Below, in pieces: positions 19,622 to 63,674 of a DNA stretch of 64,000 nucleotides. The DNA is taken from IMG/VR virus record IMGVR_UViG_3300050821_009835, positions 124,001-188,000 of that record. One strand, given 5' to 3'. The position numbers were made by a program, and so were the translations under genes. Numbering within the stretch: position 1 is the first letter of the stretch; each line of letters starts with the position of its first letter. The notes under the pieces are model-generated. The model was not told the origin of the DNA. It saw nothing but the letters and a program-made list of their open reading frames with translations, and did no database searches.

Positions 19622-20632
19622 TCATAAACCAGGGCACAGCTCCAAAGCAAGATCAAGTGTTGGTTTATCATCACCAGCTAACGCAATAAGCACATCGCGT
19701 GGCTCAGATGTAGCTACGTTGCTTACGGCTTCGTCCATAGACTGAAAGAAGTCCGTAATGTTCTCCAGTTTACCCACGGTCTCCATTCCTTTGTCTGCTG
19801 TACGAAATGCAACATCTAAAGGCTTTGTGGGAATGGGAACTTCTCGGGGACGATATGCACCTTTTTCCGTGAATCGAAGAACCGTAGCAACTACCGGGTG
19901 ACCGTCTTCGTCTGTAGGTAAAGCCGCCCGTGCTAGGGATCCTAGCTGAACATGGGTCACATTTCCCACTTCATTTATGCCAGCCCGGCTATGATCGTGG
20001 CCCCAAAGCAGAAAATCATAATCACAATCCGCAACCTCATTATACCCAATTTTAGTCGCCCCCCATAGTGAGCCGCGTTCACCAAGTGCCCCATATTGAT
20101 GAACGATTCCAACACGATACTTCGCCAGCGCGGTGCGGAGCGGAGCGTTTAGGATACGCTCAAGAGTTTTCAAACCATCATGTTCATACGGGAAGGCGTC
20201 GACTAATACCCCGAAAGTTTCTGTCTTATTTACAAAAAGAATGGACTGTTTAGTCAGGTCATGATACACCCCGGCTGCGATAAGAATTCCAAGAGGAGAA
20301 TCGGGTAGTGTGGACATTTTGTCCCACTGAATGTCATGATTTCCCACTGCCCCTATCACGACTCCCTCTGGAAAAGACCCGAATATTCGGGTAATTTTTT
20401 CAATCAAAGAACAGGAGTTTCCAGGATGTTTGGGCTGCTTATAATGGAAACAATCCCCTCCAAAAAGGGCCACTCCATCCACCTTAAAACAGAGGTCTTT
20501 AACAAAATTCACCTTATCTAGGATGGCTTGTTGGTAGTCGTCTCTTCTTCTCCCAATAGGAATGGCAGATAAATGAGCATCTGTGAAAAACACAAAATTT
20601 ATCTCATTCGATGGTAGGATTTTAACCAGCAT
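19622..20632 (-). CDS. SbcD/Mre11/gp47-like nuclease
   Basis: FFTDAHL, GGDCFH, GNHD, VHQ, GHDH, GSL motifs; same operon as the SbcC-like ATPase. Confidence 0.8.
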   Translation of the reverse strand: MLVKILPSNEINFVFFTDAHLSAIPIGRRRDDYQQAILDKVNFVKDLCFKVDGVALFGGDCFHYKQPKHPGNSCSLIEKITRIFGSFPEGVVIGAVGNHDIQWDKMSTLPDSPLGILIAAGVYHDLTKQSILFVNKTETFGVLVDAFPYEHDGLKTLERILNAPLRTALAKYRVGIVHQYGALGERGSLWGATKIGYNEVADCDYDFLLWGHDHSRAGINEVGNVTHVQLGSLARAALPTDEDGHPVVATVLRFTEKGAYRPREVPIPTKPLDVAFRTADKGMETVGKLENITDFFQSMDEAVSNVATSEPRDVLIALAGDDKPTLDLALELCPGL

Positions 20633-21054
20633 TAGACTGGAACATCTTCTGGCTCCGTGTTAGTCACGGTATAAGTCCCATCTTCTTCAGGAATAACAAA
20701 CCAGATAGGTAGGCCAAATTTCTCGGCAATCTTACGCTCTGCCTTTACACCAGTTGAAATTGAAAAGCCGGGAATAGTAAGAATCCACATTTCCGAGCAG
20801 CGAGAAAGGATGCATTCATCAAAATTTGCCCAGAACTCCCACTCAATAGGCAGAATACAACGTTCCGCGATCGGATGAGTATGAGCAATTGGAGAATAGA
20901 AATGGCGACCATCTTTGATATTATTCATCAGCCAACCCATACAGTCTACGGCCTTGTGGAATCTAACAGTCCACATCTCCTTATCTTTGTGAGTGTAGGG
21001 AGAAGCCAGATAGATCAGTTTACCAAAGAACTCTGGTTGTTGAGCGATATTCAT
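20632..21054 (-). CDS. DUF1937 / nucleoside deoxyribosyltransferase-like protein
   Basis: IYLASPYTH, YSPIAHTH, STGVKAE. Confidence 0.75.
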   Translation of the reverse strand: MNIAQQPEFFGKLIYLASPYTHKDKEMWTVRFHKAVDCMGWLMNNIKDGRHFYSPIAHTHPIAERCILPIEWEFWANFDECILSRCSEMWILTIPGFSISTGVKAERKIAEKFGLPIWFVIPEEDGTYTVTNTEPEDVPV

Positions 21055-21530
21055 TAGGCCTCTCTAGGTTTAGGCTTAATACTTCGAATGTGGCGAAACG
21101 CAACTCCTGCCTCCTGAAACATCTTCATCGCCTCTTTGTAATCTTCAGCGTATTTTTCGTTATTGAGATCCGGCATAAGCCCCACAAGATTTTTGATGCC
21201 ACACTGACAAAGAGCGGCGGCGCAAGGCCCACAGGGAAATCCGTGATCACCATTTAAATAAACAGTTCCACCCGTGAGAGAAATTCCAACACGTGAAGCA
21301 TTGAAGATAGCATTCTTTTCTGCGTGGATAGTCCAGATGTATTTTAATGGGCGTTCAGATCTTTCTTCAACTGTATCATCCACCCCACGCGGGAAACCAT
21401 TATAACCAACCGTAAGAATTTCTCGACTCGGGCCAATAATAACACAGCCAACTTTGGTGGTGTCTTTGCTCCAACTAGCAATCATCGCGGCCATGTCCAT
21501 CAACCGCTGATCCCAAAGACTCATCCCCAT
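21054..21530 (-). CDS. dCMP deaminase
   Basis: SKD.TKVGCVI, GYNGFPRG, IHAEKNAI, PCGPCA. Confidence 0.92.
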   Translation of the reverse strand: MGMSLWDQRLMDMAAMIASWSKDTTKVGCVIIGPSREILTVGYNGFPRGVDDTVEERSERPLKYIWTIHAEKNAIFNASRVGISLTGGTVYLNGDHGFPCGPCAAALCQCGIKNLVGLMPDLNNEKYAEDYKEAMKMFQEAGVAFRHIRSIKPKPREA

Positions 21531-53387: not shown

Positions 53388-55391
53388 CTAAGGTTTGTCC
53401 GTAATCATTAGTCGGACATCCGTCTTTTTCATTATTGCCCACGGCCTCTGACCCTCGTCATAAGCGACAGCAGCAACAGTACCAAAATCTGCGAGCTCGC
53501 ATACTCCCCCAGCAGAGCAAGCCAATTCTTTGGCTGAAGTCGTGCTATCTTCCTTTTCAAATTCTGGAAGCCGAGACCAATCAAGGGTTGGAAATTCCGA
53601 CACTCTCTTTTGATACTCTCCCTCTGAAATTTCTGCGTAGGGTGGTTGCCGATAAATTGTTTCTGAATATGGGAGGAAACTTACGCCACCGATTTCTTCA
53701 AAGTGTTCGTAAACCCAGGCAGCCACTTGTATCCATTCATGCTGCTTAACATAAATTGTTGTGGAGGGATTATGTTCGCACCAATGACGTAGATACGTCA
53801 AATATAGTTCAAGTTGCTGAACAGCCGTTCTGGTTCCACGCTTTAAGCTGTTCTTTGGAGATTCTAAAGGGAAGTAGAAGACGTCCACATCATTCGGCTT
53901 AGTAACGTCCGGCTCACTAGGTACACCTGAAGCTTTTAAGAATTGACCCAAGGGATCTTTACGATCACCTCTTACGGCTCGCAAGATGTAATCCGACCAA
54001 CGGTCATGAATACCCGAAGAACTTCCGCAAAGCTGGCTTACTGTTCCCGAAGGTTTTGTACATGTAATTGCAACAGAAACATTAATGCCCAACCGCTTGG
54101 CCCAATCCTTACAGACAGTTAGTGCATACTCGCGAAGCTCGTCTAGGAGTGTCTCTAATTCGGGGCCGTTCGTACTTAAGAGTACATTATCGGCAATGCC
54201 GGTTAGAGACACTCCAAGCAATCGTTCTTCCTCGGCATTCTTCTGCCAAATCTTGCGAAGATAGCGGAAGTCAGTCAAGGTCGATTGCAAGCAGCCAAGA
54301 ATGACTGCGTGGCGAATCTTGTGTTTTAAAGTTTGTTTAGTATCTTCAGGGCGGGCAACGACTTCAGTTAAGTTGCACAATCCACAAGGCCGAAGGTAGA
54401 TTTCTGCGCATGGGTTTACTCCAAAGTTAATACCCTTGTATTTACGTCTACCAGTTTTCTTGGCTTGATGAACTGCGGCTTCTCGATTAAAAATACCTCG
54501 CTCGCCTGCTTTGCTCTCCACGAGCGTGAGCCATTCACGCATGAAGATTTCAACCTCAGGTTTTTCCGTATAAGCAACAGAATTGTTACTCAACGCGCGA
54601 TGAGGTGAATCGATCCACCATTTTCCATTTTTCGCATTACGCATACGATCATCTGAAAGATTAGAAAGAGATAAAAGAGCACTCCGCCGAACCCCACCAG
54701 AAACTGCACAATCGGCAATCGTACACATGAGATCGTGACACTCTAAGGAGTTGAGTTTTCTGCCAGCAGCATTCTGAAAAAGATTAACAGCAAAACGGAA
54801 GCAACGTTCCAACGGTTCCGGGCCGGATGCGCGGCCACCGAAGGTCTTCAAGACAGCACCCGCAGGACGCAAAGCACTGGTATCCCACTTAGGAATAAGA
54901 CCACCGTACAGCAAAGATATTAGCTGCCGCAGTGAAGTAGCCCACCCGATTTTACTGTCCATGACTTTGATAACAGTGTTCGTTGGATAGAAAGTTTCTG
55001 CAATAGTTGGCATTAATCCAACAAATTGCCGTTCAACTGAAAACCCCACCCCCACACCGCACATACTCAGATACAGAGTCTCATCGAATGCTCGTGGGTC
55101 GTCCACAATTACAAAAGAGCAGTTGAAGCCAGCCACTTGATCTTTTTCCAGTGCCGGGCCAGCCGTCATCAAAGCACGCATAGAGGGCATGACTTCAAGA
55201 TTAAGAATAGCTTTTTCTAGTTCCGCCGAAGTTTTTTCACGCCCGTCTTCGGGGATTCTTGGGGTAAAAAATTCACTGTAACGATGAACAGTTTCGTCCC
55301 AGTTTTCTCTGCGATTTTCTTTTGGAAGCCAGCGTGCGTAGCGGCTTTTGTGTATGAATTGTTGAAAAGGCGACATCTTGGTACTAGACAT
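53388..55391 (-). CDS. nrdJ: Class II (adenosylcobalamin-dependent) ribonucleotide reductase
   Basis: PSMRALMTAG, FNCSF, VSGGVRRSA, NPCAEI..CNLTE, KPSGTVSQL, C-terminal CSAGGVCE. Confidence 0.92.
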   Translation of the reverse strand: MSSTKMSPFQQFIHKSRYARWLPKENRRENWDETVHRYSEFFTPRIPEDGREKTSAELEKAILNLEVMPSMRALMTAGPALEKDQVAGFNCSFVIVDDPRAFDETLYLSMCGVGVGFSVERQFVGLMPTIAETFYPTNTVIKVMDSKIGWATSLRQLISLLYGGLIPKWDTSALRPAGAVLKTFGGRASGPEPLERCFRFAVNLFQNAAGRKLNSLECHDLMCTIADCAVSGGVRRSALLSLSNLSDDRMRNAKNGKWWIDSPHRALSNNSVAYTEKPEVEIFMREWLTLVESKAGERGIFNREAAVHQAKKTGRRKYKGINFGVNPCAEIYLRPCGLCNLTEVVARPEDTKQTLKHKIRHAVILGCLQSTLTDFRYLRKIWQKNAEEERLLGVSLTGIADNVLLSTNGPELETLLDELREYALTVCKDWAKRLGINVSVAITCTKPSGTVSQLCGSSSGIHDRWSDYILRAVRGDRKDPLGQFLKASGVPSEPDVTKPNDVDVFYFPLESPKNSLKRGTRTAVQQLELYLTYLRHWCEHNPSTTIYVKQHEWIQVAAWVYEHFEEIGGVSFLPYSETIYRQPPYAEISEGEYQKRVSEFPTLDWSRLPEFEKEDSTTSAKELACSAGGVCELADFGTVAAVAYDEGQRPWAIMKKTDVRLMITDKP

Positions 55392-55575
55392 GAAGACTGA
55401 TCCTTGCGAAATGAAACTTAACAGCGGTTTGAGCAACAACCTGGGTCAGAAATTTATGGGAAAAATTCATTAGCGAAAAATTGAACATGGTGACTTAATA
55501 CTGTGTTTACGATGGTTTGCGGGGTATTATTAAAATCCCGAAAAGTTCTAATTTTTCGGTAAAACACTGACATTC

Positions 55576-56037: not shown

Positions 56038-56594
56038 TCTGAACTCAGTTCATTTTCCGTTTTGCTTCCGCGTGCCGCTGGCTCTTCTGTTCTGTTTGGA
56101 ACGTCTGGTATATCTGGTACTTCTGGAATAGGCCGCCTTTCCGTATCACCATCCGCCGCTCTTCCGCCGCCTTTCCGTATCACCATCCGCCGCTCTTCCG
56201 TATCACCATCCGTATCACCATCCGTTTTTTCCTCATAAAATGGAACGCACTTACTCCCGTTCTTCCAAGCGTTTAGCCGCTTATTGCTCAGTTTTCCACC
56301 TTGAGGTTCAAACTTGTTAATTAGTATGTTGTAACCCTTGTGTGTGCCATCGCCTTTTCGATAATTTATATATTTGTTTTCTCTAAGACGAGTTAGCGAC
56401 CGTTGAATTGACTGTTTCAGACGGGGGTTGTCAAAACCGTAGGCAATACCAAGTGCGGACCCGTGATAGATGCCCGTAGCCCAATTACACTCGTAGTGTA
56501 GGTACAGATAAATGCCTAAATCTTGGGGGGAAATTTTACCCTGTTTGATGTGCTCGCGTAGGCCATTGCGAAGTCTTGCAAATCCATCGTTCAT
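56004..56594 (-). CDS. Replication-initiator-like winged-helix protein
   Basis: N-terminal FARL..GIYLYL..W..G..SLTRLRENKYI wHTH followed by a repeat linker; next to the DnaB-like helicase. Confidence 0.6.
   Translation of the reverse strand: MNDGFARLRNGLREHIKQGKISPQDLGIYLYLHYECNWATGIYHGSALGIAYGFDNPRLKQSIQRSLTRLRENKYINYRKGDGTHKGYNILINKFEPQGGKLSNKRLNAWKNGSKCVPFYEEKTDGDTDGDTEERRMVIRKGGGRAADGDTERRPIPEVPDIPDVPNRTEEPAARGSKTENELSSDWQDIMQEVGQ
56132..56224. repeat. Iteron-like repeats (4 x TCCGTATCACCA, including an exact 34-nt duplication)
   Basis: 12-mer at 56140, 56174, 56197, 56209; 34-mer at 56132-56165 and 56166-56199. Confidence 0.8.
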
Positions 56595-58096
56595 TTTATA
56601 CTCTCGAGAGTAGCCAATGCTGGATCGTAATCGGAAGGTGGCTTAATGTCGGATACTTTAGCTCTAGAACCACCAACCCAACCATTAGGCGACATCTTTG
56701 CTAGAAAAGGGTCAAAGCCCACGCCGTCGCGATCTTTAGGGCAGGAGAACATTACATCGTAACAACCTTGTGGGTCCTGTCCTTTGTTGAATACTCCCAC
56801 GATGAAAGTCATACTACGGCCTAACTCTTTTTCATTGTTGATGGCGCTGGGTTTATACACACCGTCCTGTTCTTCTTTCGCTGCCCGGTTCAACCCCTCT
56901 TCATTAACTTGTACAGGAGAAATTATACACATCCCTCGTCCACCGTCAAAGACCATGCCAAATTGACGGATATCTTTGATCATCGCACTCATCTTAGATC
57001 GTTGATCATCGGTATTTCTAGAGGGCGGTTCGAGCAACTGAATATAATCGAGCAAGACTGCATCCAAAGGAGCCACTAAGTCTTCGGTTTCAATTAGAGT
57101 TTTAATGTGCTCCCAAGAAGCAACACTGGGTTTTCTAATGGTAAGTCTTCCTTCTATGGTTTCTTTAAAATCTTGAGCAACTTCAATCCACATACGAAGT
57201 AAATCGGTTGTAAGCTGCTTCTTTCTTTTTTTAGCATAAGTTAAGGCTTCATATTTTCCACCAAATTTTGGGTTGTTAGCGTGCAGAAAAATAAATTTGT
57301 CACGTTCAACCGTTTGGCTATTTTCAACGGAAATGTGAAGTACGTTTCTTCCCGCCGCAGCCATGTTATACAACATAAAACGACTTACAGTGGATTTCCC
57401 GCTGCCTAAGTACCCAAGAATGCCAATAAAATCCTGGCGTTCTAGGTAGAAGTCGCTGAATCCACATTCTAATTGGGGGATACTCAATGATTGTTGGTAT
57501 TCTTCAGGACCAAGATGAGCTTCTGTTTGCACCACTATGGGCTTGAGAGTATTGCTGGCATCCACCAGAAGTCCTTCTTCTAATTCGTGCACTAAATATT
57601 TGAGTGCATCACGAGGACCAGACATTTTCTTGTTGCGCTGACCCATGAAATTCATTTCGATGCTGCCCAAATTAATGCCGTTAGTCAATTTTAGAACGTT
57701 GGTGATCCGACGCATTTCCCAATCTGTACACCAGTCTTTGAGGACCACAGCAAGATCTGCTGGGTCATGAATAGTAAGATCGGTTTGGCTTCGATAATCT
57801 TTTTTAAGAGCATCCAGCAATTCATCATTTTTTTCAGTAGATTTAACTTCTTCAAGGAGAATTTCGTAGCTAGGGAGTGTGCCTGTTTCTTGCGCAGTTT
57901 TCCATAAGGCAGCAAGGAGGTCAAATTGTACATCGTCAGCGGCGGCAATTCGTTTAAGAATGACGTAATAGTCATTCATCCAGGACCAAACATTGGCCGA
58001 ACGAATTTGTTCTTCCGAAGAATTTCCGTGGCGAAGAAGGGAGTGAAAAAGACGCCACCAGTTGAAAACAGGGTCTGGCTTCTTAGTCGGAGGCAC
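56591..58096 (-). CDS. DnaB-like (SF4) replicative helicase
   Basis: GYLGSGKS Walker A, ISVEN, VLLDYIQL Walker B, SPVQVN, KDRDG. Confidence 0.85.
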   Translation of the reverse strand: MPPTKKPDPVFNWWRLFHSLLRHGNSSEEQIRSANVWSWMNDYYVILKRIAAADDVQFDLLAALWKTAQETGTLPSYEILLEEVKSTEKNDELLDALKKDYRSQTDLTIHDPADLAVVLKDWCTDWEMRRITNVLKLTNGINLGSIEMNFMGQRNKKMSGPRDALKYLVHELEEGLLVDASNTLKPIVVQTEAHLGPEEYQQSLSIPQLECGFSDFYLERQDFIGILGYLGSGKSTVSRFMLYNMAAAGRNVLHISVENSQTVERDKFIFLHANNPKFGGKYEALTYAKKRKKQLTTDLLRMWIEVAQDFKETIEGRLTIRKPSVASWEHIKTLIETEDLVAPLDAVLLDYIQLLEPPSRNTDDQRSKMSAMIKDIRQFGMVFDGGRGMCIISPVQVNEEGLNRAAKEEQDGVYKPSAINNEKELGRSMTFIVGVFNKGQDPQGCYDVMFSCPKDRDGVGFDPFLAKMSPNGWVGGSRAKVSDIKPPSDYDPALATLESIK

Positions 58097-58196
58097 TATA
58101 TACCTCCGATAAAACGAATGTTTATCATGTAGTATTCCTTAAACAAAGAGAGCAAGGCCCTCCAGTGGAGTAGATAATACCGCTTTTTCCCGTATC

Positions 58197-59312
58197 ATGC
58201 TATATACCATGAATGACAGCATTTTCAGAATACAGTCCATCGACCGTAATTTGATCCATTGGGAAGACCATCTTCTGGATCTCAGTCCTTGCGAAAAAAT
58301 TGGTGGCATGTGGTTTAAACGAGAGGATTTCTTTGCCCCTTTAGGATTTGGTGGTATCAATGGCAGCAAACTCCGTGTTTGCATTTGGCTAATTAACGAA
58401 GCACTCAAGCAAGGGGCCAAGGGGGTTTCGCATGGTGCTGTGATAGGTTCCCCTCAACATCCCATGGTAGCTTGTATTGCTGCTCATTACAATGTTCCAG
58501 TGATTGATTGTATTGGTACTAAGAAACCACTTGAACACGAAACTTTAGCGACGGCTGCATGGATGGGGGCAGAATTCCGTTCGTTTAATCCGGGCTTTGC
58601 AGCTACATTAAACAGCAAGGCCGAACAGATTGCAAAAGAACTTAGATATTTCCATTTAGAAACTAACATCACTGTAGATCAGGAGAAGAATCCTGCGGCT
58701 CGGGTGGAAGCATTTCACAAGGTCGGCAGTGTGCAGGTCCAAAATATTCCTGATCACATTGAGAACATCATCGTGCCAGCGGGTAGTTGCAACAGTGTGA
58801 CCTCTGTCTTATACGGGATTGCCCAATATCGCCCCAAGAATCTCCAGAATGTTATCCTCATGGGCATTGGTTCTTGCGGTAGTTCTGATCCGACTTACAT
58901 CCATCGTCGTCTGCAAATTATCGAAGGAGTAAGTGGAGTAAACTCTCAGGACATGTTTGGTTGGTTCCTGAACTACAAACACAACAATCCTAGCCAAAGC
59001 GCGGCCACTTGGCCTCGTAAATTCTCACCTATCTACACATTAACCCATTATGATGTAAATGGGGGCTGTGGACAGTGTAAGAAGTGCGAAGGAGGGTATT
59101 GCACCTACAACGATCTGATGCCCTATCGATTTAATGATCTGGATTTTCACCCGAGGTATGAGGGTAAGATGATGTGTTTCATGGGAGATCATCTATCCGA
59201 ATTCCAACAGTATCTCAATGACAAGACACTCTTCTGGATTGTTGGATCTAAGCCATCTGCGGCAGCGATGGCTCCGGTATTGAAGGAGAAATTTGGGGAT
59301 TTTTATGAGTGA
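58197..59312 (+). CDS. PLP-dependent enzyme (fold type II, ACC-deaminase-like) of the DNA hypermodification cassette
   Basis: WFKRED..GGINGSKLR PLP lysine, GSPQ, VPAGSCNS, FHPRYEGK, LFWIVG. Confidence 0.8.
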   Translation: MLYTMNDSIFRIQSIDRNLIHWEDHLLDLSPCEKIGGMWFKREDFFAPLGFGGINGSKLRVCIWLINEALKQGAKGVSHGAVIGSPQHPMVACIAAHYNVPVIDCIGTKKPLEHETLATAAWMGAEFRSFNPGFAATLNSKAEQIAKELRYFHLETNITVDQEKNPAARVEAFHKVGSVQVQNIPDHIENIIVPAGSCNSVTSVLYGIAQYRPKNLQNVILMGIGSCGSSDPTYIHRRLQIIEGVSGVNSQDMFGWFLNYKHNNPSQSAATWPRKFSPIYTLTHYDVNGGCGQCKKCEGGYCTYNDLMPYRFNDLDFHPRYEGKMMCFMGDHLSEFQQYLNDKTLFWIVGSKPSAAAMAPVLKEKFGDFYE

Positions 59313-60525
59313 TCTTTTCTACAGCCCGTTCGATCAAGAAGTCATAGGGCTTGACAAAATACTCGTGTGTTCAGCAGATCATACGACTCCAGGCCGCTAT
59401 TGTGAACTTTTGGGCTTGTTTGAACAACAGGATCTTAAAGAGGGCATGGATTTTCGCAAGCCGGAATTCCGAAGGGAAGTATTTCTACGTTTCTACGAGT
59501 TCTGCCTGAAGTATCGGCTGCACGCCGGGGCTAGTCTACCCTACATGACGTTCCCGTTCTTGAGCAAAGAAATTGGTTGGGGGCGGGAGGAGTTGCTGTG
59601 GTTCGTTTTCATCAACGGGAACACTCAACATCCGTTGACTTCTTGGGTTATTTTCAATCAGTTCCCTGACTTTGCTAATCTAGATATCCCGGCTCTGGAT
59701 GCTTGGTACAACAAGGAATGGCCTCGTCTTGAATTTGACACAGATCGTCGACACCAGAAACGCGATTTTATCAAATCGGTTACTCGCTATAAGGAACTCT
59801 GTGGATGTAGAGATCAAGCGTGGCTTTTTCACAACCAAATAGTAAGCGACGACCCACTTGAGAATTTTCAAGTTGTATGGGATATGGTGCGTAAGGATTT
59901 CTATTCTTTTGGTCGTATGAGTACGTTTTCTTATCTTGAGTACCTGCGTATCGCTCGGCTGAACATTGAGCCGAACTCTTTGTTTCTAGAAGACATATCC
60001 GGGAGTAAATCGCTTCGTAATGGTTTGGCAAAAGTATTGGGCCGGGATGACCTCGATTGGGGTGGCCCGGATAACCCTACAGGGTTCGAAGGAAAGTATA
60101 CTCCTCAGATGATGGATTGGTTGAAAAAAGAAGGTGCCATCCTTCTTGAGGAAGCTAAGAAAAGATTCAAAGGCCGGGATTTCGCTCAGGATGTGACTTA
60201 TTTTACGCTGGAATCGGAGTTCTGTACTTACAAGGGCTGGCATCGCTTAAATCGGCGTTACCCTGGAGTTTATGCTGATATTTTTCATGGAAGAATTAAG
60301 AAAGCCGAGGCCCGTTGGCCCGAAGAGGATTTTTCGGTCTTTTGGAAGATGCGTCAGCAAATGTTGCCTCAGTATTTGCGTCTTGAGGATAGTCCTGGGG
60401 ATCCTGGTTTAAAGCCTGAGAAACAAAATCACTACCGAGAAACTGGGCAGGTTATCATGATGTTGGACTGGTCCTGTTTTAAGAATGATTTTAACGATAG
60501 AATTTTGAGTATTGAAGCAACATGA
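59293..60525 (+). CDS. Amino acid:DNA transferase (aGPT-pyrophosphorylase clade 2-like)
   Basis: W..F..GNTQ, FDTDRR, FGRMSTFSYLE, SGSKS.RNGL, FTLES..C.YK, RRYPG.Y.D; flanked by a PLP enzyme and a kinase. Confidence 0.75.
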   Translation: MGIFMSDLFYSPFDQEVIGLDKILVCSADHTTPGRYCELLGLFEQQDLKEGMDFRKPEFRREVFLRFYEFCLKYRLHAGASLPYMTFPFLSKEIGWGREELLWFVFINGNTQHPLTSWVIFNQFPDFANLDIPALDAWYNKEWPRLEFDTDRRHQKRDFIKSVTRYKELCGCRDQAWLFHNQIVSDDPLENFQVVWDMVRKDFYSFGRMSTFSYLEYLRIARLNIEPNSLFLEDISGSKSLRNGLAKVLGRDDLDWGGPDNPTGFEGKYTPQMMDWLKKEGAILLEEAKKRFKGRDFAQDVTYFTLESEFCTYKGWHRLNRRYPGVYADIFHGRIKKAEARWPEEDFSVFWKMRQQMLPQYLRLEDSPGDPGLKPEKQNHYRETGQVIMMLDWSCFKNDFNDRILSIEAT

Positions 60526-61169
60526 AATGCCTTATAACTATCCTCGGGGCGGGGGCATCGGGTAAGTCCACGCTAACTCGTGCGTTGTGTGGTTCTGGAG
60601 GAAAAGAAGAAGTTGTCTTCTACAATGTAGAAGGCAAGGCAGAAAAAGCTAAATTTGTCCTCTTTCCAAACGGCGCTGCGATAGCGGGGAACCTACAAAG
60701 CACCTCTGATTCTGTCAGCAGTATGGAAGCCCGTTCTTTACTAATCCAGGATTTGCTTAAACGTCCAGATGTTCAATTCGTGGTCACAGATGGTGTTCGT
60801 TCGAGTAAGAAATGGGATGTAGACTGGGTACAGGAGAAGTTGGACTGCGCCGTTGTCTATGTGTATTTGGATATCCCCCTGGAAGAGAATCTTCGACGTT
60901 TAGTGGCAAGAAGAGCAGCCAAGGGTAAAACGGAGATGAATCCGAAGACGTACGAGAACATGTTGGCATTCCGCGAGCGAGCTGCCTTTGTTTGGAAATC
61001 TGCCATTGATACTTACAAACGTCAGCCTGTTAAGTTTATCAAATTGATTGAGGGCCAGACTGTTCAGGATTGGACTCGTGAAGTTAAGCGAACCATTTCG
61101 CAAATGTTTGACTCTGAAGATCAACGTGCGAAAAGAGCGCAGCACTTTAAAAACAGCACTAGTTATTAG
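60522..61169 (+). CDS. P-loop kinase, probable 5hmU DNA kinase
   Basis: ILGAGASGKST, VTDG, YLDIPLEE.L.R..ARR; cassette context. Confidence 0.7.
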   Translation: MKCLITILGAGASGKSTLTRALCGSGGKEEVVFYNVEGKAEKAKFVLFPNGAAIAGNLQSTSDSVSSMEARSLLIQDLLKRPDVQFVVTDGVRSSKKWDVDWVQEKLDCAVVYVYLDIPLEENLRRLVARRAAKGKTEMNPKTYENMLAFRERAAFVWKSAIDTYKRQPVKFIKLIEGQTVQDWTREVKRTISQMFDSEDQRAKRAQHFKNSTSY

Positions 61170-61200
61170 CAGTAAATTAGAACTTTTAAACAGGAGAAAC

Positions 61201-62451
61201 ATGAAGCGATTTGCGTTAATGGTACTAACTTCTCTCGTCCTTTCACTCTGTGCTTTTGCTACATCCTCGGATACAGTAGAAGTCAATTTTGCCCGCTGTG
61301 ACACCGACAATTACGGGATGATGCCTTACTTTGGTAACAAAATATCTTTGGCTACAATCGGGGCATTTGCTAATGAGACATTTGGAACTATCGTCAATGG
61401 TGGTGGTTCAATTGGCAATTGTAACCCAGGCTTTAATCAGTTTGGCAGCGGAGTGGTATTTGAGTTCGTACCCCCTGCGAACTACTCTGTTCTAACAACT
61501 TTTGCAGGAGGCGATGGTTTTTACCCACAGACAAATGTAGTCCAAGATTCTACCGGGACTATATGGGGAACTTTAACCCGAACTGGGGCCAACGGCGGTG
61601 AGATATTCTATCTCAAGTATTCCAGCGGTGTTTGGAATTTAACCGAACCGTATAATAACGTAAGTGGGCCTCCAAAGGGAGACATCGTTCTCTCTTCGTG
61701 TGGTTCAGACCAGTGTCTCACTGGTACTACAGACCAAGGCGGGGCTAACGGTAACGGTGAGATTTGGCAGTATGACATAACAAACCCCAACTTTACCGAC
61801 GTCTATGATTTGAAAGCGGTCAGTGGTGGGGTGTACCCTGACGGTAACAGCATTCTTGGAGGCTTGGCGTTAGGGAGTTCCGGGGTGTTCTACGGGGTTG
61901 CGTCAGGCGGTGGTGCTTATGGGCAAGGAGTGATATTCTCTTGGAGTCCAACATCTGGGTATACTGTTCTCTACAATTTCTGCCCCGCAGGAGGAAATTG
62001 TGTTGATGGTGCTGTTCCATACGGTGCCCCTTTCATCGACAGCATGGGAACTTTATATGGAACCACTGGAGGTGGGGGAGATTCCGATAGCGACGGTGTT
62101 ATCTATCAGTATGTTCCTGGCGGTTTTCTAACCGTGCTTCACACTTTCGGTAATTCCGATGGTAAGCAACCTGTAGGTGAATTGGTATCATCCGGAACCA
62201 AGTTGTGGGGTACTACAACTTACGGCGGTGCTCACTCTTGTGGAGTAGTATTCTCGTACTCTGGAACTACATACACTGATGTGTATGACTTCCAGGGCGG
62301 AACTACTGATGGGTGTAATACTTATGCTCCCATCACTTTTGACGGTGGCAGTATGTATACCATGACCAACAGAGGCGGAAACAACGGCGGTTCAATGGCA
62401 CCCGGTTGTTCCAGAAGTGGGTGCGGAGTCTTGGTAAAGATAAACCCTTAG
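61201..62451 (+). CDS. Secreted GloVer (Gloeo_Verruco)-repeat beta-propeller protein
   Basis: Signal peptide MKRFALMVLTSLVLSLCAFA; repeated G.LYGTT..GG....G.IF and T.LY.F....DG..P.G units. Confidence 0.8.
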   Translation: MKRFALMVLTSLVLSLCAFATSSDTVEVNFARCDTDNYGMMPYFGNKISLATIGAFANETFGTIVNGGGSIGNCNPGFNQFGSGVVFEFVPPANYSVLTTFAGGDGFYPQTNVVQDSTGTIWGTLTRTGANGGEIFYLKYSSGVWNLTEPYNNVSGPPKGDIVLSSCGSDQCLTGTTDQGGANGNGEIWQYDITNPNFTDVYDLKAVSGGVYPDGNSILGGLALGSSGVFYGVASGGGAYGQGVIFSWSPTSGYTVLYNFCPAGGNCVDGAVPYGAPFIDSMGTLYGTTGGGGDSDSDGVIYQYVPGGFLTVLHTFGNSDGKQPVGELVSSGTKLWGTTTYGGAHSCGVVFSYSGTTYTDVYDFQGGTTDGCNTYAPITFDGGSMYTMTNRGGNNGGSMAPGCSRSGCGVLVKINP

Positions 62452-62473
62452 ACGTTAATAATTTAGATTAACC

Positions 62474-62496
62474 GGGGCACCTTTAAAAGGTGCCCC
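62474..62496. terminator. Bidirectional terminator between convergent genes
   Basis: GGGGCACCT/AGGTGCCCC hairpin flanked by A/T runs. Confidence 0.7.
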
Positions 62497-62503
62497 ATTT
62501 GTT

Positions 62504-63121
62504 TTACGAGACAGTTGGGGAAGAACTGCCAGGTAGGGGTCCAAATTTAGGTTTGGCCTTTTGTTTTGCTCTAATCTTTTCTATCACTGTCCAGGCTCTA
62601 GCTAGTTCTGCTTCTCCAGCTTCATTCATCTCTAACTTTTGGGCATTGCATAAAGCTGAAAGTGTGACCATGACGCCACCAACCTCTTGGAATTTTTCTC
62701 CCACAGGGCGATTAAAGACATAGTCCACTAATTTGTGCGCTTCTTCTTGAGTTGTTCCACAGGCCTGAACAAGTTCTAGGGCTTCCTCAAGGAATCTGTG
62801 ATTACGTTCCACTTTATCGGTTGCAATCTCTTTGCCGAAGCAAGCATACAACCAATCGCGAACTCTGTTTTGGTAAGATTGTTTCTGAATTGACATGACC
62901 ACAAAATTACTGGGCTGCATGGCTTGACAGGACGCGGCTATGTAGGGTACGCTGAGGAGGATCTCTCGTCCAGAATAGAGTTTTGTTGTGGGATCCCATT
63001 CTCTGAGTAATAATTCATCACCAACTTGGTACCCACGGTCGTTTTTGCGTACCTCGAAAGTTTTGGTACCGGATAAGATAGTGGTGAAATAGATAGGCCA
63101 GCATTTCAATTCATGTTTCAT
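62504..63121 (-). CDS. ASCH/DUF3850 domain fused to a MazG-like NTP-pyrophosphatase domain
   Basis: HELKCWP.YF...SGTKTFEVRKNDRGYQVGD.L.LREWD plus RFLEEALELVQ...QEVGGVMVTL. Confidence 0.75.
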   Translation of the reverse strand: MKHELKCWPIYFTTILSGTKTFEVRKNDRGYQVGDELLLREWDPTTKLYSGREILLSVPYIAASCQAMQPSNFVVMSIQKQSYQNRVRDWLYACFGKEIATDKVERNHRFLEEALELVQACGTTQEEAHKLVDYVFNRPVGEKFQEVGGVMVTLSALCNAQKLEMNEAGEAELARAWTVIEKIRAKQKAKPKFGPLPGSSSPTVS

Positions 63122-63161
63122 CCTGTTTAATACTCAGGTATTTAGACACCGCTAGTGAATC

Positions 63162-63674
63162 TTGGACTTACGGCTGTCAGCAACAGGTTGTATGGATGAA
63201 CTATTTGAAGTAAAACTCCTTAATTACACCTTTCGTTTCAAAAGACTTACATGGCGAGAGGAGTTTCTTATCAAATTTCCCAAAGGGAAGGATCAAACAA
63301 GGGTGTATCTTTCTCATGCACTTAAAGAAGTATCTGGCCTTTCGGTAGAAACGATTGAAGAAGCCACACGTATTTTGGAGGCTCTTCCATCAGCCATTTC
63401 TAGTCGAGTTTTTCGTATCTATAAAGGACAGATTCAACCCAATCAGAGATTTGAAACGGCAGCTTTGTACAAAGCCCCAGAACCCAATAAGTTCCGGGTG
63501 TTGCTACAAGACGATGAGACTGAGAAAGACGAACTTGCTGAGCGGGCGCGCATACGACTGGAACAGCAATTTGGTCATCGTGAAGTTGCCGCAGCCACGG
63601 CAGTAGATCTTCAGATTTTAAAGGCTTCTAAATTACGTGGAGCCATTAAGGCAAGTCCAGAAAATGTCTCTTAA
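63162..63674 (+). CDS. Hypothetical protein
   Basis: 170 aa. Confidence 0.5.
   Translation: MDLRLSATGCMDELFEVKLLNYTFRFKRLTWREEFLIKFPKGKDQTRVYLSHALKEVSGLSVETIEEATRILEALPSAISSRVFRIYKGQIQPNQRFETAALYKAPEPNKFRVLLQDDETEKDELAERARIRLEQQFGHREVAAATAVDLQILKASKLRGAIKASPENVS

What the first reader, a model, noticed from the sequence alone, without database searches (positions are those of the whole stretch)
58197..61169. Thymine hypermodification cassette (PLP enzyme + amino acid:DNA transferase + 5hmU kinase) with no radical SAM gene
Seen: three overlapping plus-strand genes with the motifs listed in the features; dCMP deaminase and MazG-like genes lie elsewhere in the window. Established: in phages ViI and M6, 5hmU in DNA is phosphorylated, receives Ser or Gly from an aGPT-Pplase2 transferase, and is decarboxylated by a PLP enzyme; M6 also needs a radical SAM isomerase. 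Inference: this phage replaces T with 5hmU and makes a ViI-like 5-(2-aminoethoxy)methyl-U, or a new adduct, as anti-restriction armour.
Basis: partly seen in the sequence, partly recalled or inferred. Interest (0 to 1): 0.7.

Follow-up and report, generated by a model that had tools for sequence, protein, structure and literature searches.

The report
ViI-type DNA hypermodification cassette, odd precursor
A soil jumbo phage of about 340 kb carries a real three-gene module (PLP decarboxylase, amino acid:DNA transferase, DNA base kinase) like the one Salmonella phage ViI uses to decorate thymine, but its only hydroxymethylase looks cytosine-specific, so the origin of the modified base is unusual and unresolved.

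Summary
Three translationally coupled plus-strand genes at 58197-61169 encode three enzymes:
- a fold-type II PLP enzyme orthologous to ViI gp226 (the O-seryl-thymidine decarboxylase);
- an amino acid:DNA transferase (Pfam ADDT);
- a P-loop kinase that iterative searches place with the six verified 5-hmdU DNA kinases.

No radical SAM gene was found in the 265-kb record or in 71 kb of extension.

The same phage exists as a 340,335-bp contig. That genome adds a second kinase (Pfam HMUDK_HMUD1) and an HMUDK_hel protein, so the ViI-like post-replicative kit is complete.

The only thymidylate-synthase homolog carries D143/C146/T147/D169/D177, the T4 gp42 dCMP-hydroxymethylase signature. It sits in the D177 clade (98/99 support). 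All dUMP hydroxymethylases examined have N147/N177. No Tet/JBP thymine dioxygenase and no ThyX were found.

A complete 300-kb relative (G013) has the same combination.

The likeliest reading is that 5hmdCMP is made and then deaminated to 5hmdUMP by the phage dCMP deaminase, which feeds a ViI-like adduct on T positions. Direct hypermodification of 5hmC is the novel alternative.

Verdict: a new variant of a known kind.

The parts
58197..59312 (+). Fold-type II PLP-dependent enzyme, ortholog of ViI gp226 (O-seryl-thymidine decarboxylase). The predicted Schiff-base lysine K58 lies in GINGSKLR.
   Evidence: phrog_3650 E 3.7e-85. tblastn to ViI 140628-141764: 35% identity over 401 columns, E 1.7e-72. 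The genome search gives 44% and 54% in two pieces. PDB 1j0a E 3.4e-6, the template Lee et al. used for gp226 (PMC8989533). K58 aligns with ViI K92.
59305..60525 (+). Amino acid:DNA transferase (ADDT/AADT, formerly aGPT-Pplase2). The ORF is open from TTG 59293. ATG 59305 is the likely start because it matches the N-terminus of the 79%-identical relative L047.
   Evidence: PF18724 68.2 bits against cut-off 26.2. 40% identity to Mycobacterium phage Hangman gp3 and 28-29% to ViI gp247. 48 invariant columns shared with four homologs, among them ViI gp247. 76 columns at least 95% conserved across 70 homologs.
60522..61169 (+). P-loop DNA base kinase of the 5-hmdU DNA kinase (5-HMUDK) family, with Walker A GAGASGKST.
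   Evidence: AAA_33 28.5 bits. M6 gp54: E 9.3e-7. Local jackhmmer from M6 gp54, or from this protein, recovers the six verified kinases plus this gene, a second own kinase and one unrelated PNKP ORF at much weaker score (the run from this protein adds one borderline hit at E 0.0046). Pfam HMUDK_HMUD1 itself gives no match at E 0.5 or better.
21054..21530 (-). dCMP deaminase. It is the candidate supplier of dUMP or, as proposed here, the enzyme that converts 5hmdCMP to 5hmdUMP.
   Evidence: PF00383 67.8 bits and MafB19-deam 39.9 bits. The ortholog in G013 is 42% identical.
58097..58196 (.). 100-bp divergent intergenic region between the DnaB-like helicase gene (minus strand) and the cassette. 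The cassette promoter is presumed to lie here.
   Evidence: Weak promoter-like sites on both strands (58171-58198 plus strand, 58124-58095 minus strand), not above the shuffle expectation. This is positional inference only.

Best explanation
The three genes are the core of a ViI-type post-replicative pyrimidine hypermodification pathway in a soil jumbo phage of about 340 kb.

Proposed steps:
1. A 5-hydroxymethylpyrimidine in replicated DNA is phosphorylated on its hydroxymethyl group. The cassette kinase does this, backed by a second HMUDK paralog and an HMUDK_hel protein elsewhere in the genome.
2. The ADDT displaces the phosphate with an amino acid attached through a side-chain atom, so the alpha-amine stays free. 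Serine through its oxygen, as in ViI, is most likely.
3. The gp226-like PLP enzyme decarboxylates the adduct to an aminoethoxymethyl-type group. No radical SAM isomerase is needed.

The unusual step is upstream. The hydroxymethyl group comes from the genome's only thymidylate-synthase homolog, which is a dCMP hydroxymethylase by signature and phylogeny. The most likely link is that the phage dCMP deaminase converts part of the 5hmdCMP to 5hmdUMP. 5hmU would then enter DNA at T positions and be the cassette's substrate.

Shown: the gene content, family memberships, diagnostic residues, and conservation of the combination in a complete relative.
Inferred: every enzymatic step, the amino acid used, and the deamination link.
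For: Cassette identity.

Full ViI-like kit:
- The second kinase at G000:245201-245800 passes Pfam HMUDK_HMUD1 (29.8 bits against 27).
- HMUDK_hel (147 bits) lies at 333,519-334,394 of the 340-kb contig of the same phage. The 11,742-bp overlap between that contig and the record has 0 mismatches.

No radical SAM.

The TS homolog is of the dCMP type:
- It carries D143/C146/T147/D169/D177, like T4-type gp42. SPO1, SP10, PaMx11, PhiW-14, ViI and M6 all have N147/N177.
- All 120 nearest homologs carry the same signature.
- The tree separates the D177 and N177 clades at 98/99.
- The meaning of the residues comes from PMC8670742 and PMC13326640.

No other source of the hydroxymethyl group:
- There is one TS-family gene only.
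- There is no Tet_JBP. Pfam finds none while the positive control G005 rings. A profile built from 53 5mYOX sequences also finds none.
- There is no ThyX.

The combination is conserved. The complete 299,875-bp record G013, which has direct terminal repeats, holds a single D177 TS, an adjacent PLP and ADDT, two kinases, three HMUDK_hel genes and a deaminase, at 41-57% identity.

Evidence favouring a 5hmU rather than a 5hmC substrate:
- 62 of the 82 ADDT relatives at 46-79% identity have a 5hmU source within 10 kb. In 52 it is a 5mYOX; in 10 it is a TS homolog, and all 10 are N177.
- In no ADDT column is the jumbo clade fixed for a residue that differs from one conserved in the 63 T-type enzymes.
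Against: - No enzyme here has been assayed.
- 5hmdCMP deamination by this deaminase is inferred only from gene content. That T-even dCMP deaminases accept hm-dCMP is recalled from memory and was not checked.
- The last 4.3 kb or so of the 340-kb genome was not seen. It holds part of a 1005-aa gene, a 303-aa gene and a cut gene of at least 405 aa, and no Pfam hit is on record for any of them.
- The cassette kinase does not reach Pfam's HMUDK model.
- The ADDT is only 28% identical to the serine transferase gp247, so the amino acid may differ.
- A route through 5hmdCMP is more roundabout than a plain dUMP hydroxymethylase, and I know of no precedent for it.
Confidence: 0.45

Rival explanations
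1. Direct cytosine hypermodification. The dCMP hydroxymethylase puts 5hmC into the DNA. The kinase, ADDT and PLP module then works on 5hmC and gives a 5-(2-aminoethoxy)methyl-cytosine-type base. No amino-acid-derived cytosine adduct made by an ADDT has been described.
For: - The only hydroxymethylase in two genomes, one of them complete, is D177/T147.
- There is no 5hmU-generating enzyme.
- The pairing is conserved across 41-57% protein divergence.
- The exocyclic-methylene chemistry proposed for ADDTs is common to C5 chemistry on cytosine and uracil (PMC8989533, discussion).
Against: - No ADDT column separates the jumbo clade from 63 enzymes tied to thymine-derived 5hmU.
- Relatives at 57-60% identity sit next to N177 hydroxymethylases or 5mYOX.
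- 40 other D177-TS phage records searched lack an ADDT, so the D177 enzyme does not generally travel with this module.
- Activity of the kinase family on 5hmC is not mentioned in the paper read.
Confidence: 0.2
2. Post-replicative thymine oxidation by an unrecognised dioxygenase. The candidate is the conserved 267-aa 2OG-Fe(II) oxygenase at G000:63390-64193, 0.5 kb upstream of the TS homolog. It would make 5hmU in DNA, and the D177 enzyme would serve a separate cytosine pathway.
For: - The closest ADDT relatives mostly use 5mYOX (52 of 82 loci).
- PMC13229309 reports thousands of divergent 5mYOX-like sequences that lack a Tet_JBP annotation.
- The oxygenase has an HxD...H triad and homologs on other 300-340 kb contigs. 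It is conserved in G013, about 6 kb from an HMUDK_hel and kinase pair.
- AlkB, a nucleic-acid oxygenase, is among its fold matches.
Against: - No similarity to Tet_JBP by Pfam, BLAST or a 53-member profile.
- The best fold matches are PKHD/YbiX and prolyl hydroxylases, with TM at most 0.47 by the query. No TET or JBP appears in the top 50.
- Atlas neighbours are 2OG-FeII_Oxy_3 and HalD-like amino-acid oxygenases.
- There is no ParB partner.
Confidence: 0.13
3. A dUMP hydroxymethylase supplies 5hmdUMP. Either the D177 enzyme accepts dUMP despite its signature, or a second TS homolog lies in the unseen 4.3 kb.
For: - All other parts of the 5hmU toolkit are present: dCMP deaminase, dUTPase, a HAD phosphatase, NUDIX and MazZ-like pyrophosphatases, two kinases, HMUDK_hel, ADDT and PLP.
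- About 4.3 kb of the genome is unseen.
Against: - N177 decides for dUMP and D177 for dCMP in mutational work cited in PMC8670742 and PMC13326640.
- All verified dUMP hydroxymethylases checked are N147/N177.
- Complete G013 has a single TS gene, and it is D177.
- The three genes in the unseen tail measure 1005 aa, 303 aa and at least 405 aa. None has a Pfam hit on record.
Confidence: 0.12

Closest known systems
Salmonella phage ViI (Kuttervirus) 5-NeOmdU pathway: gp67 and gp243 5-HMUDKs, gp247 serine:DNA transferase, gp226 PLP decarboxylase, gp160 (PMC8989533)
   Same: - PLP enzyme orthologous to gp226 (E 1.7e-72, same lysine motif).
- ADDT homologous to gp247.
- Two HMUDK-type kinases plus an HMUDK_hel protein.
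- No radical SAM gene.
- dCMP deaminase and dUTPase present.
   Different: - ViI has an N147/N177 dUMP hydroxymethylase next to gp67. This phage has only a D177/T147 enzyme.
- The genes are clustered and translationally coupled here but scattered in ViI.
- The ADDT is only 28-29% identical to gp247.
- The phage is an unrelated soil jumbo phage of about 340 kb.
ParB-dependent 5mYOX (T-dioxygenase) hypermodification clusters of mycobacteriophages and metaviromes (PMC13229309). Examples: Hangman gp1-gp4 and locus L051.
   Same: These hold the closest ADDT sequences: 40% identity for Hangman gp3 and 46-60% for IMG/VR loci. They also carry a P-loop kinase, and 55 of the 82 loci carry a PLP enzyme.
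   Different: Those systems make 5hmU by oxidising T in DNA with Tet_JBP and ParB. This genome and G013 have neither.
Pseudomonas phage M6 5-NedU pathway (gp51-gp55)
   Same: Kinase homologous to gp54 (E 9.3e-7). HMUDK_hel homologous to gp55. A PLP decarboxylase step.
   Different: - M6 attaches glycine through its alpha-nitrogen and needs the radical SAM isomerase gp53, which is absent here.
- The M6 ADDT and PLP enzyme give no direct BLAST match.
T4-type dCMP hydroxymethylase (gp42) and the 5hmC phages Xp15/Effie (5hmC carbamoyltransferase context, PMC8670742) and RsoM2USA (T4 beta-glucosyltransferase-like gene nearby)
   Same: The TS homolog shares the D143/C146/T147/D169/D177 signature and the clade. 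It is 49% identical to RsoM2USA_10 and 37% to Xp15 ZI.
   Different: Those phages decorate 5hmC with sugars or a carbamoyl group and have no ADDT. Here the only recognisable tailoring module is the kinase, ADDT and PLP set.

Membership tests
ViI-type thymidine hypermodification pathway | Amino acid:DNA transferase (Pfam ADDT PF18724) with the family's conserved motifs | tested here: met
   68.2 bits against cut-off 26.2. The DTDRR, GR(L/M)S, GSKSxRNG, RDD and NRRY motifs are shared with ViI gp247. 76 columns are at least 95% conserved across 70 homologs, this protein included.
ViI-type thymidine hypermodification pathway | 5-hmdU DNA kinase (P-loop) | tested here: met
   For the cassette kinase, jackhmmer from M6 gp54 returns the six verified kinases, this gene, a second own kinase and one unrelated PNKP ORF at much weaker score. 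Pairwise E to gp54 is 9.3e-7. Pfam HMUDK_HMUD1 gives it no match. The second kinase, at G000:245201-245800, passes that model at 29.8 bits against 27.
ViI-type thymidine hypermodification pathway | PLP-dependent decarboxylase homologous to gp226, with the Schiff-base lysine | tested here: met
   E 1.7e-72 to ViI gp226. Own K58 aligns with ViI K92 in an identical GINGSKLR motif. 1j0a is the best PDB sequence match.
ViI-type thymidine hypermodification pathway | A phage-encoded source of 5hmU: a dUMP hydroxymethylase (N177) or a thymine dioxygenase | tested here: not met
   The single TS homolog is D177/T147. There is no Tet_JBP/5mYOX, ParB or ThyX. The same holds in complete G013. About 4.3 kb of the own genome is unseen.
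ViI-type thymidine hypermodification pathway | HMUDK_hel accessory protein (ViI gp160 / M6 gp55 family) | tested here: met
   PF18723 at 147 bits, at 333,519-334,394 of the 340-kb contig of the same phage.
ViI-type thymidine hypermodification pathway | 5-NeOmdU, or a related adduct, present in virion DNA | not testable with these tools
   This needs nucleoside LC-MS. Only Illumina-derived contigs are available.
M6-type 5-NedU pathway | Radical SAM glycinyl-thymine isomerase (gp53) | tested here: not met
   PF04055 finds nothing in the record. The gp53 profile finds nothing in the record, the extension or G013.
dCMP hydroxymethylase (T4 gp42 type) | Asp at E. coli ThyA position 177 (dCMP specificity), acidic residue at 143 (hydroxymethylation), Cys146 nucleophile, and Asp169 kept (so not a 5hoC synthase) | tested here: met
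   D143, C146, T147, D169 and D177. The criteria come from PMC8670742 and PMC13326640. The D177 clade has 98/99 support.
dCMP hydroxymethylase (T4 gp42 type) | Catalytic conversion of dCMP to 5hmdCMP | not testable with these tools
   This needs the in vivo or in vitro assay used in PMC13326640.
5mYOX/ParB thymine-dioxygenase hypermodification clusters | A Tet_JBP-family dioxygenase, with or without ParB, encoded in the genome | tested here: not met
   The lone 2OG oxygenase folds like PKHD and prolyl hydroxylases, not like TET/JBP.

The most novel reading that the evidence does not exclude
In this jumbo-phage lineage the kinase, ADDT and PLP module acts on 5-hydroxymethylcytosine, or on both 5hmC and 5hmU derived from one dCMP hydroxymethylase. 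That would give an amino-acid-derived cytosine hypermodification such as 5-(2-aminoethoxy)methylcytosine, which has not been described.
Probability: 0.2. Interest if true: 0.85.

Novelty: new variant of a known kind. Interest (0 to 1): 0.6.

Why it matters
Known amino-acid-derived DNA hypermodifications all start from 5hmU. That 5hmU is made either by a dUMP hydroxymethylase or by thymine dioxygenases.

Here a complete kit (kinase, transferase, decarboxylase) is paired, in at least two diverged jumbo phages, with a hydroxymethylase that looks cytosine-specific and with no recognisable 5hmU source.

Either outcome widens the known biosynthetic logic of phage DNA armour:
- a new feed-in route, in which 5hmdCMP is deaminated to 5hmdUMP so that one enzyme could supply both hm-pyrimidines;
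- the first ADDT chemistry on cytosine.

Either would bear on restriction evasion, on reading modified bases in metagenomes, and on enzymes for DNA labelling. The question can be tested with four or five recombinant proteins and commercially available 5hmU and 5hmC phage DNAs.

Tried and rejected
- Megablast of the cassette against 50,697 phage records found nothing.
- The ORF at 61048-62451 was considered as a fourth tailoring enzyme and rejected. It is a signal-peptide, Gly-rich repeat protein with no Pfam or PHROG hit.
- Sequence search of the PDB with the ADDT and the kinase gave nothing useful. PaMx11 gp46 is too distant.
- No Hangman-type 5mYOX, ParB or kinase was found in the genome. 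An RsoM2USA beta-glucosyltransferase-like query gave only one weak match (E 0.014), which was not followed up.
- The 2OG oxygenase was tested as a hidden thymine dioxygenase. It has no phage homologs in GenBank phages and no similarity to Tet_JBP. Fold search is generic and shows no TET/JBP. This reading is kept only as a minor rival.
- MazG, MazG-like and PRA-PH Pfam models found nothing.
- The N-terminal extension of the G013 deaminase ORF is an endonuclease VII domain. It says nothing about channelling.
- Base specificity could not be read from the PaMx11 gp46 structure paper. That ADDT clade is too distant, and no substrate complex exists.
- The RNA-library contigs over the kinase and the downstream ORF are short and shallow, and may be DNA carry-over. 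They are not used as evidence of expression.
- The last 4.3 kb of the 340-kb contig could not be fetched, because look-ups return other assemblies without DNA.
Full report
**Setting**

The window is bases 124001-188000 of a 264,912-bp IMG/VR virus record (G000) that CheckV rates 78% complete. The phage comes from soil metagenomes.

The same phage exists as a 340,335-bp JGI contig.
- That contig starts about 29 bases ahead of the record.
- An 11,742-bp stretch of the contig up to the record's end matches the record with 0 mismatches.
- The contig runs about 75 kb further.
- I walked that extension to position 336,044.
- An ENA assembly splits the genome at the same point into 264,969 and 75,412 bp.

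**The observation**

Three co-directional ORFs fill 58197-61169.

The first (371 aa) is a fold-type II PLP enzyme.
- It scores weakly on Pfam PALP but strongly on phrog_3650, E 3.7e-85.
- It matches the PLP enzyme of about 350 phage records, mostly ViI-like phages, at 37-39% identity.
- Against ViI itself it matches gp226 with E 1.7e-72.
- Its GINGSKLR motif is identical to ViI's. Own K58 aligns with K92, the lysine Lee et al. proposed for the internal aldimine (PMC8989533).
- Its best PDB sequence match is 1j0a, their modelling template.

The second ORF is an amino acid:DNA transferase.
- It scores 68 bits on PF18724 against a cut-off of 26.
- It shares 48 invariant columns with four homologs, among them ViI gp247.
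- Its likely start is ATG 59305, which overlaps the PLP stop by 8 nt.

The third ORF is a P-loop kinase whose ATG overlaps the ADDT stop as ATGA.
- Pfam sees only AAA_33.
- A local iterative search over five reference phage genomes plus this proteome returns the six experimentally verified 5-hmdU DNA kinases: M6 gp54, PaMx11 gp49, PhiW-14 gp37, SP10 gp186, and ViI gp67 and gp243.
- The same search returns this gene and a second paralog at G000:245201-245800.
- The only other hit from M6 gp54 is an unrelated PNKP ORF at a much weaker score. The run seeded from this protein adds one borderline hit at E 0.0046.
- The second paralog passes Pfam HMUDK_HMUD1.

Other points from the finding:
- The downstream ORF (61048-62451) is a secreted Gly-rich repeat protein and not part of the module.
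- dCMP deaminase is in the window.
- A MazG-like gene in the window was not found with three Pfam models.
- No radical SAM gene exists in the record, the extension, or a complete relative.

**The rest of the kit**

The 71-kb extension holds an HMUDK_hel protein (PF18723, 147 bits). This family includes M6 gp55 and is found in all five reference T-hypermodifying phages.

So the phage has two kinases, HMUDK_hel, an ADDT and a gp226-like decarboxylase. That is the ViI complement, clustered and translationally coupled.

**The twist**

The genome has one thymidylate-synthase homolog, at G000:64738-65577. I aligned it with E. coli ThyA, a T4-type gp42 and the hydroxymethylases of SPO1, SP10, PaMx11, PhiW-14, ViI and M6.
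- It carries D143, C146, T147, D169 and D177, exactly as gp42 does.
- Every dUMP hydroxymethylase in the set has N147 and N177.

The literature gives these residues their meaning.
- Position 177 decides dUMP (Asn) against dCMP (Asp).
- An acidic residue at 143 marks hydroxymethylases.
- D169N marks 5-hydroxy-dCMP synthases (PMC8670742; PMC13326640).

Further support:
- All 120 nearest database homologs (44-100% identity), many on 200-400 kb contigs, have the same signature.
- A maximum-likelihood tree separates the D177 clade from the N177 hydroxymethylases plus ThyA with 98/99 support. The D177 clade holds this protein, gp42, Xp15 and Effie, and RsoM2USA_10.
- Its nearest relatives in isolates sit in cytosine-modification contexts. 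Xp15 and Effie have a carbamoyltransferase next door, the 5hmC carbamoylation system of PMC8670742. RsoM2USA has a T4 beta-glucosyltransferase-domain gene 4.5 kb away and a separate canonical ThyA.

**Other possible sources of 5hmU**

- Pfam Tet_JBP finds nothing in G000, G001 or G013, while it does ring in the control record G005.
- A profile grown from 53 5mYOX sequences finds nothing in the record, the extension or G013.
- There is no ParB and no ThyX.
- A conserved 267-aa 2OG-Fe(II) oxygenase lies 0.5 kb upstream of the TS homolog. Its confident model (pLDDT 92) resembles PKHD/YbiX hydroxylases, prolyl hydroxylases and AlkB only loosely (TM at most 0.47 by the query), and no TET or JBP appears among the top 50 matches. 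Language-model neighbours are 2OG-FeII_Oxy_3 and HalD-like. It remains a minor candidate.

**Is the pairing an accident?**

I looked from both sides.
- Of 82 IMG/VR loci whose ADDT is 46-79% identical to this one, 52 have a 5mYOX within 10 kb and 10 have a TS homolog.
- All ten of those TS homologs are N147/N177. In one, L144, an intein interrupts the motif.
- Of 41 D177-TS records searched, only one has an ADDT: G013, a 299,875-bp record with direct terminal repeats, rated 100% complete.

I fetched G013 whole. It holds:
- a single TS gene, again D143/C146/T147/D169/D177;
- PLP and ADDT genes side by side (45% and 57% identical to those here);
- orthologs of both kinases (41% each);
- three HMUDK_hel genes;
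- a dCMP deaminase;
- the 2OG oxygenase;
- no 5mYOX, no radical SAM gene and no ThyX.

The combination is therefore conserved across deep divergence in a lineage of soil jumbo phages. A missing genome end does not explain it.

**Which base?**

Two readings remain.
- 5hmdCMP is deaminated to 5hmdUMP by the phage dCMP deaminase, so 5hmU enters DNA and the module works as in ViI.
- The module works on 5hmC directly.

A differential-conservation test favours the first. In no column is the jumbo clade (7 sequences) fixed for a residue that differs from one conserved in 63 ADDTs tied to thymine-derived 5hmU. In addition, 76 columns are at least 95% conserved over all 70 sequences. This is indirect evidence, and the second reading stays open at about one in five.

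**Product**

Without an isomerase, the PLP enzyme needs a free alpha-amine. The amino acid must therefore be attached through its side chain, as with O-serine in ViI (PMC8989533, section on decarboxylation).

The orthology to gp226 suggests an aminoethoxymethyl adduct. The ADDT is only 28% identical to gp247, so another amino acid cannot be excluded.

**Verdict**

- The cassette is real and is a member of a known kind.
- Pairing this cassette with a dCMP-type hydroxymethylase makes it a new variant worth a bench test.

Noticed in passing
window 61201-62451 (+); hairpin at 62474-62496: Directly after the cassette lies a gene for a protein with a signal peptide (MKRFALMVLTSLVLSLCAFA) and Gly-rich repeats. 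It has no Pfam or PHROG match. A strong 10-bp-stem terminator-like hairpin follows it. Short contigs from a soil RNA library cover it at 100% identity.
   Followed up: partly
window 20632-21054 (-): A DUF1937 protein sits directly beside the dCMP deaminase; from memory, this family has a nucleoside 2-deoxyribosyltransferase-like fold. A second such protein (Nuc_deoxyri_tr2) lies near the TS cluster at about G000:56.8 kb. They may hydrolyse or exchange bases of dNMPs as part of pool editing.
   Followed up: no
G000:58-68 kb (L058), outside the window: A nucleotide-pool cluster surrounds the TS homolog: NUDIX (59001-59699), a MazZ-like dGTP_diPhyd_N protein (61462-61944), a HAD phosphatase (62359-63378), a 2OG-Fe(II) oxygenase (63390-64193) and dUTPase (67229-67726).
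   Followed up: partly
G000:63390-64193 (L001:18-821): This 267-aa 2OG-Fe(II) oxygenase has no homolog in 50,697 GenBank phage records but 48 metagenomic homologs, several on 300-340 kb contigs. Its atlas neighbours include HalD/BesD-like amino-acid oxygenases, so it might hydroxylate an amino acid used by the ADDT.
   Followed up: partly
G000 about 11.1-15.7 kb (L148:11136-15729): A sugar-nucleotide cluster holds a GT2 glycosyltransferase, a short-chain dehydrogenase, two RmlD/GDP-mannose-dehydratase-like epimerases and a methyltransferase. It might glycosylate DNA (5hmC) or a surface structure.
   Followed up: no
whole record: The IMG/VR record is the first 265 kb of a 340,335-bp genome (JGI 3300021181, Ga0210388_10000011). 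An ENA assembly breaks at the same place. The extension holds structural-size genes, Ku, rIIB, a 5'-3' exonuclease, HNH genes and HMUDK_hel.
   Followed up: yes
L144:12846-14951: A dUMP hydroxymethylase next to an ADDT is interrupted by an intein of about 350 aa (CLAGDT...VLAHN/C), inserted four residues before the specificity Asn177.
   Followed up: partly
L051:9021-10550; L070:2302-4437: Relatives show natural fusions: an ADDT with a C-terminal P-loop kinase in L051, and one ORF matched by both the PLP and the ADDT profiles in L070. This supports a functional link among the three cassette genes.
   Followed up: partly
L047:11227-12900: In the 79%-identical relatives L047 and L049, a metallophosphoesterase gene and small ORFs lie between the ADDT and the kinase, so the tight overlap seen here is not universal.
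   Followed up: partly
window 62504-63121 (-); 53388-55439 (-); 56591-58096 (-): The cassette's neighbours are an ASCH/DUF3850 protein, a B12-type (class II) ribonucleotide reductase and a DnaB-like helicase. The cassette sits at a strand switch next to replication and nucleotide genes.
   Followed up: no
G000:238515-243776 (L057): PP2C phosphatase, UvrD helicase, NUDIX and NAMPT (NAD salvage) genes lie just upstream of the second HMUDK kinase.
   Followed up: no
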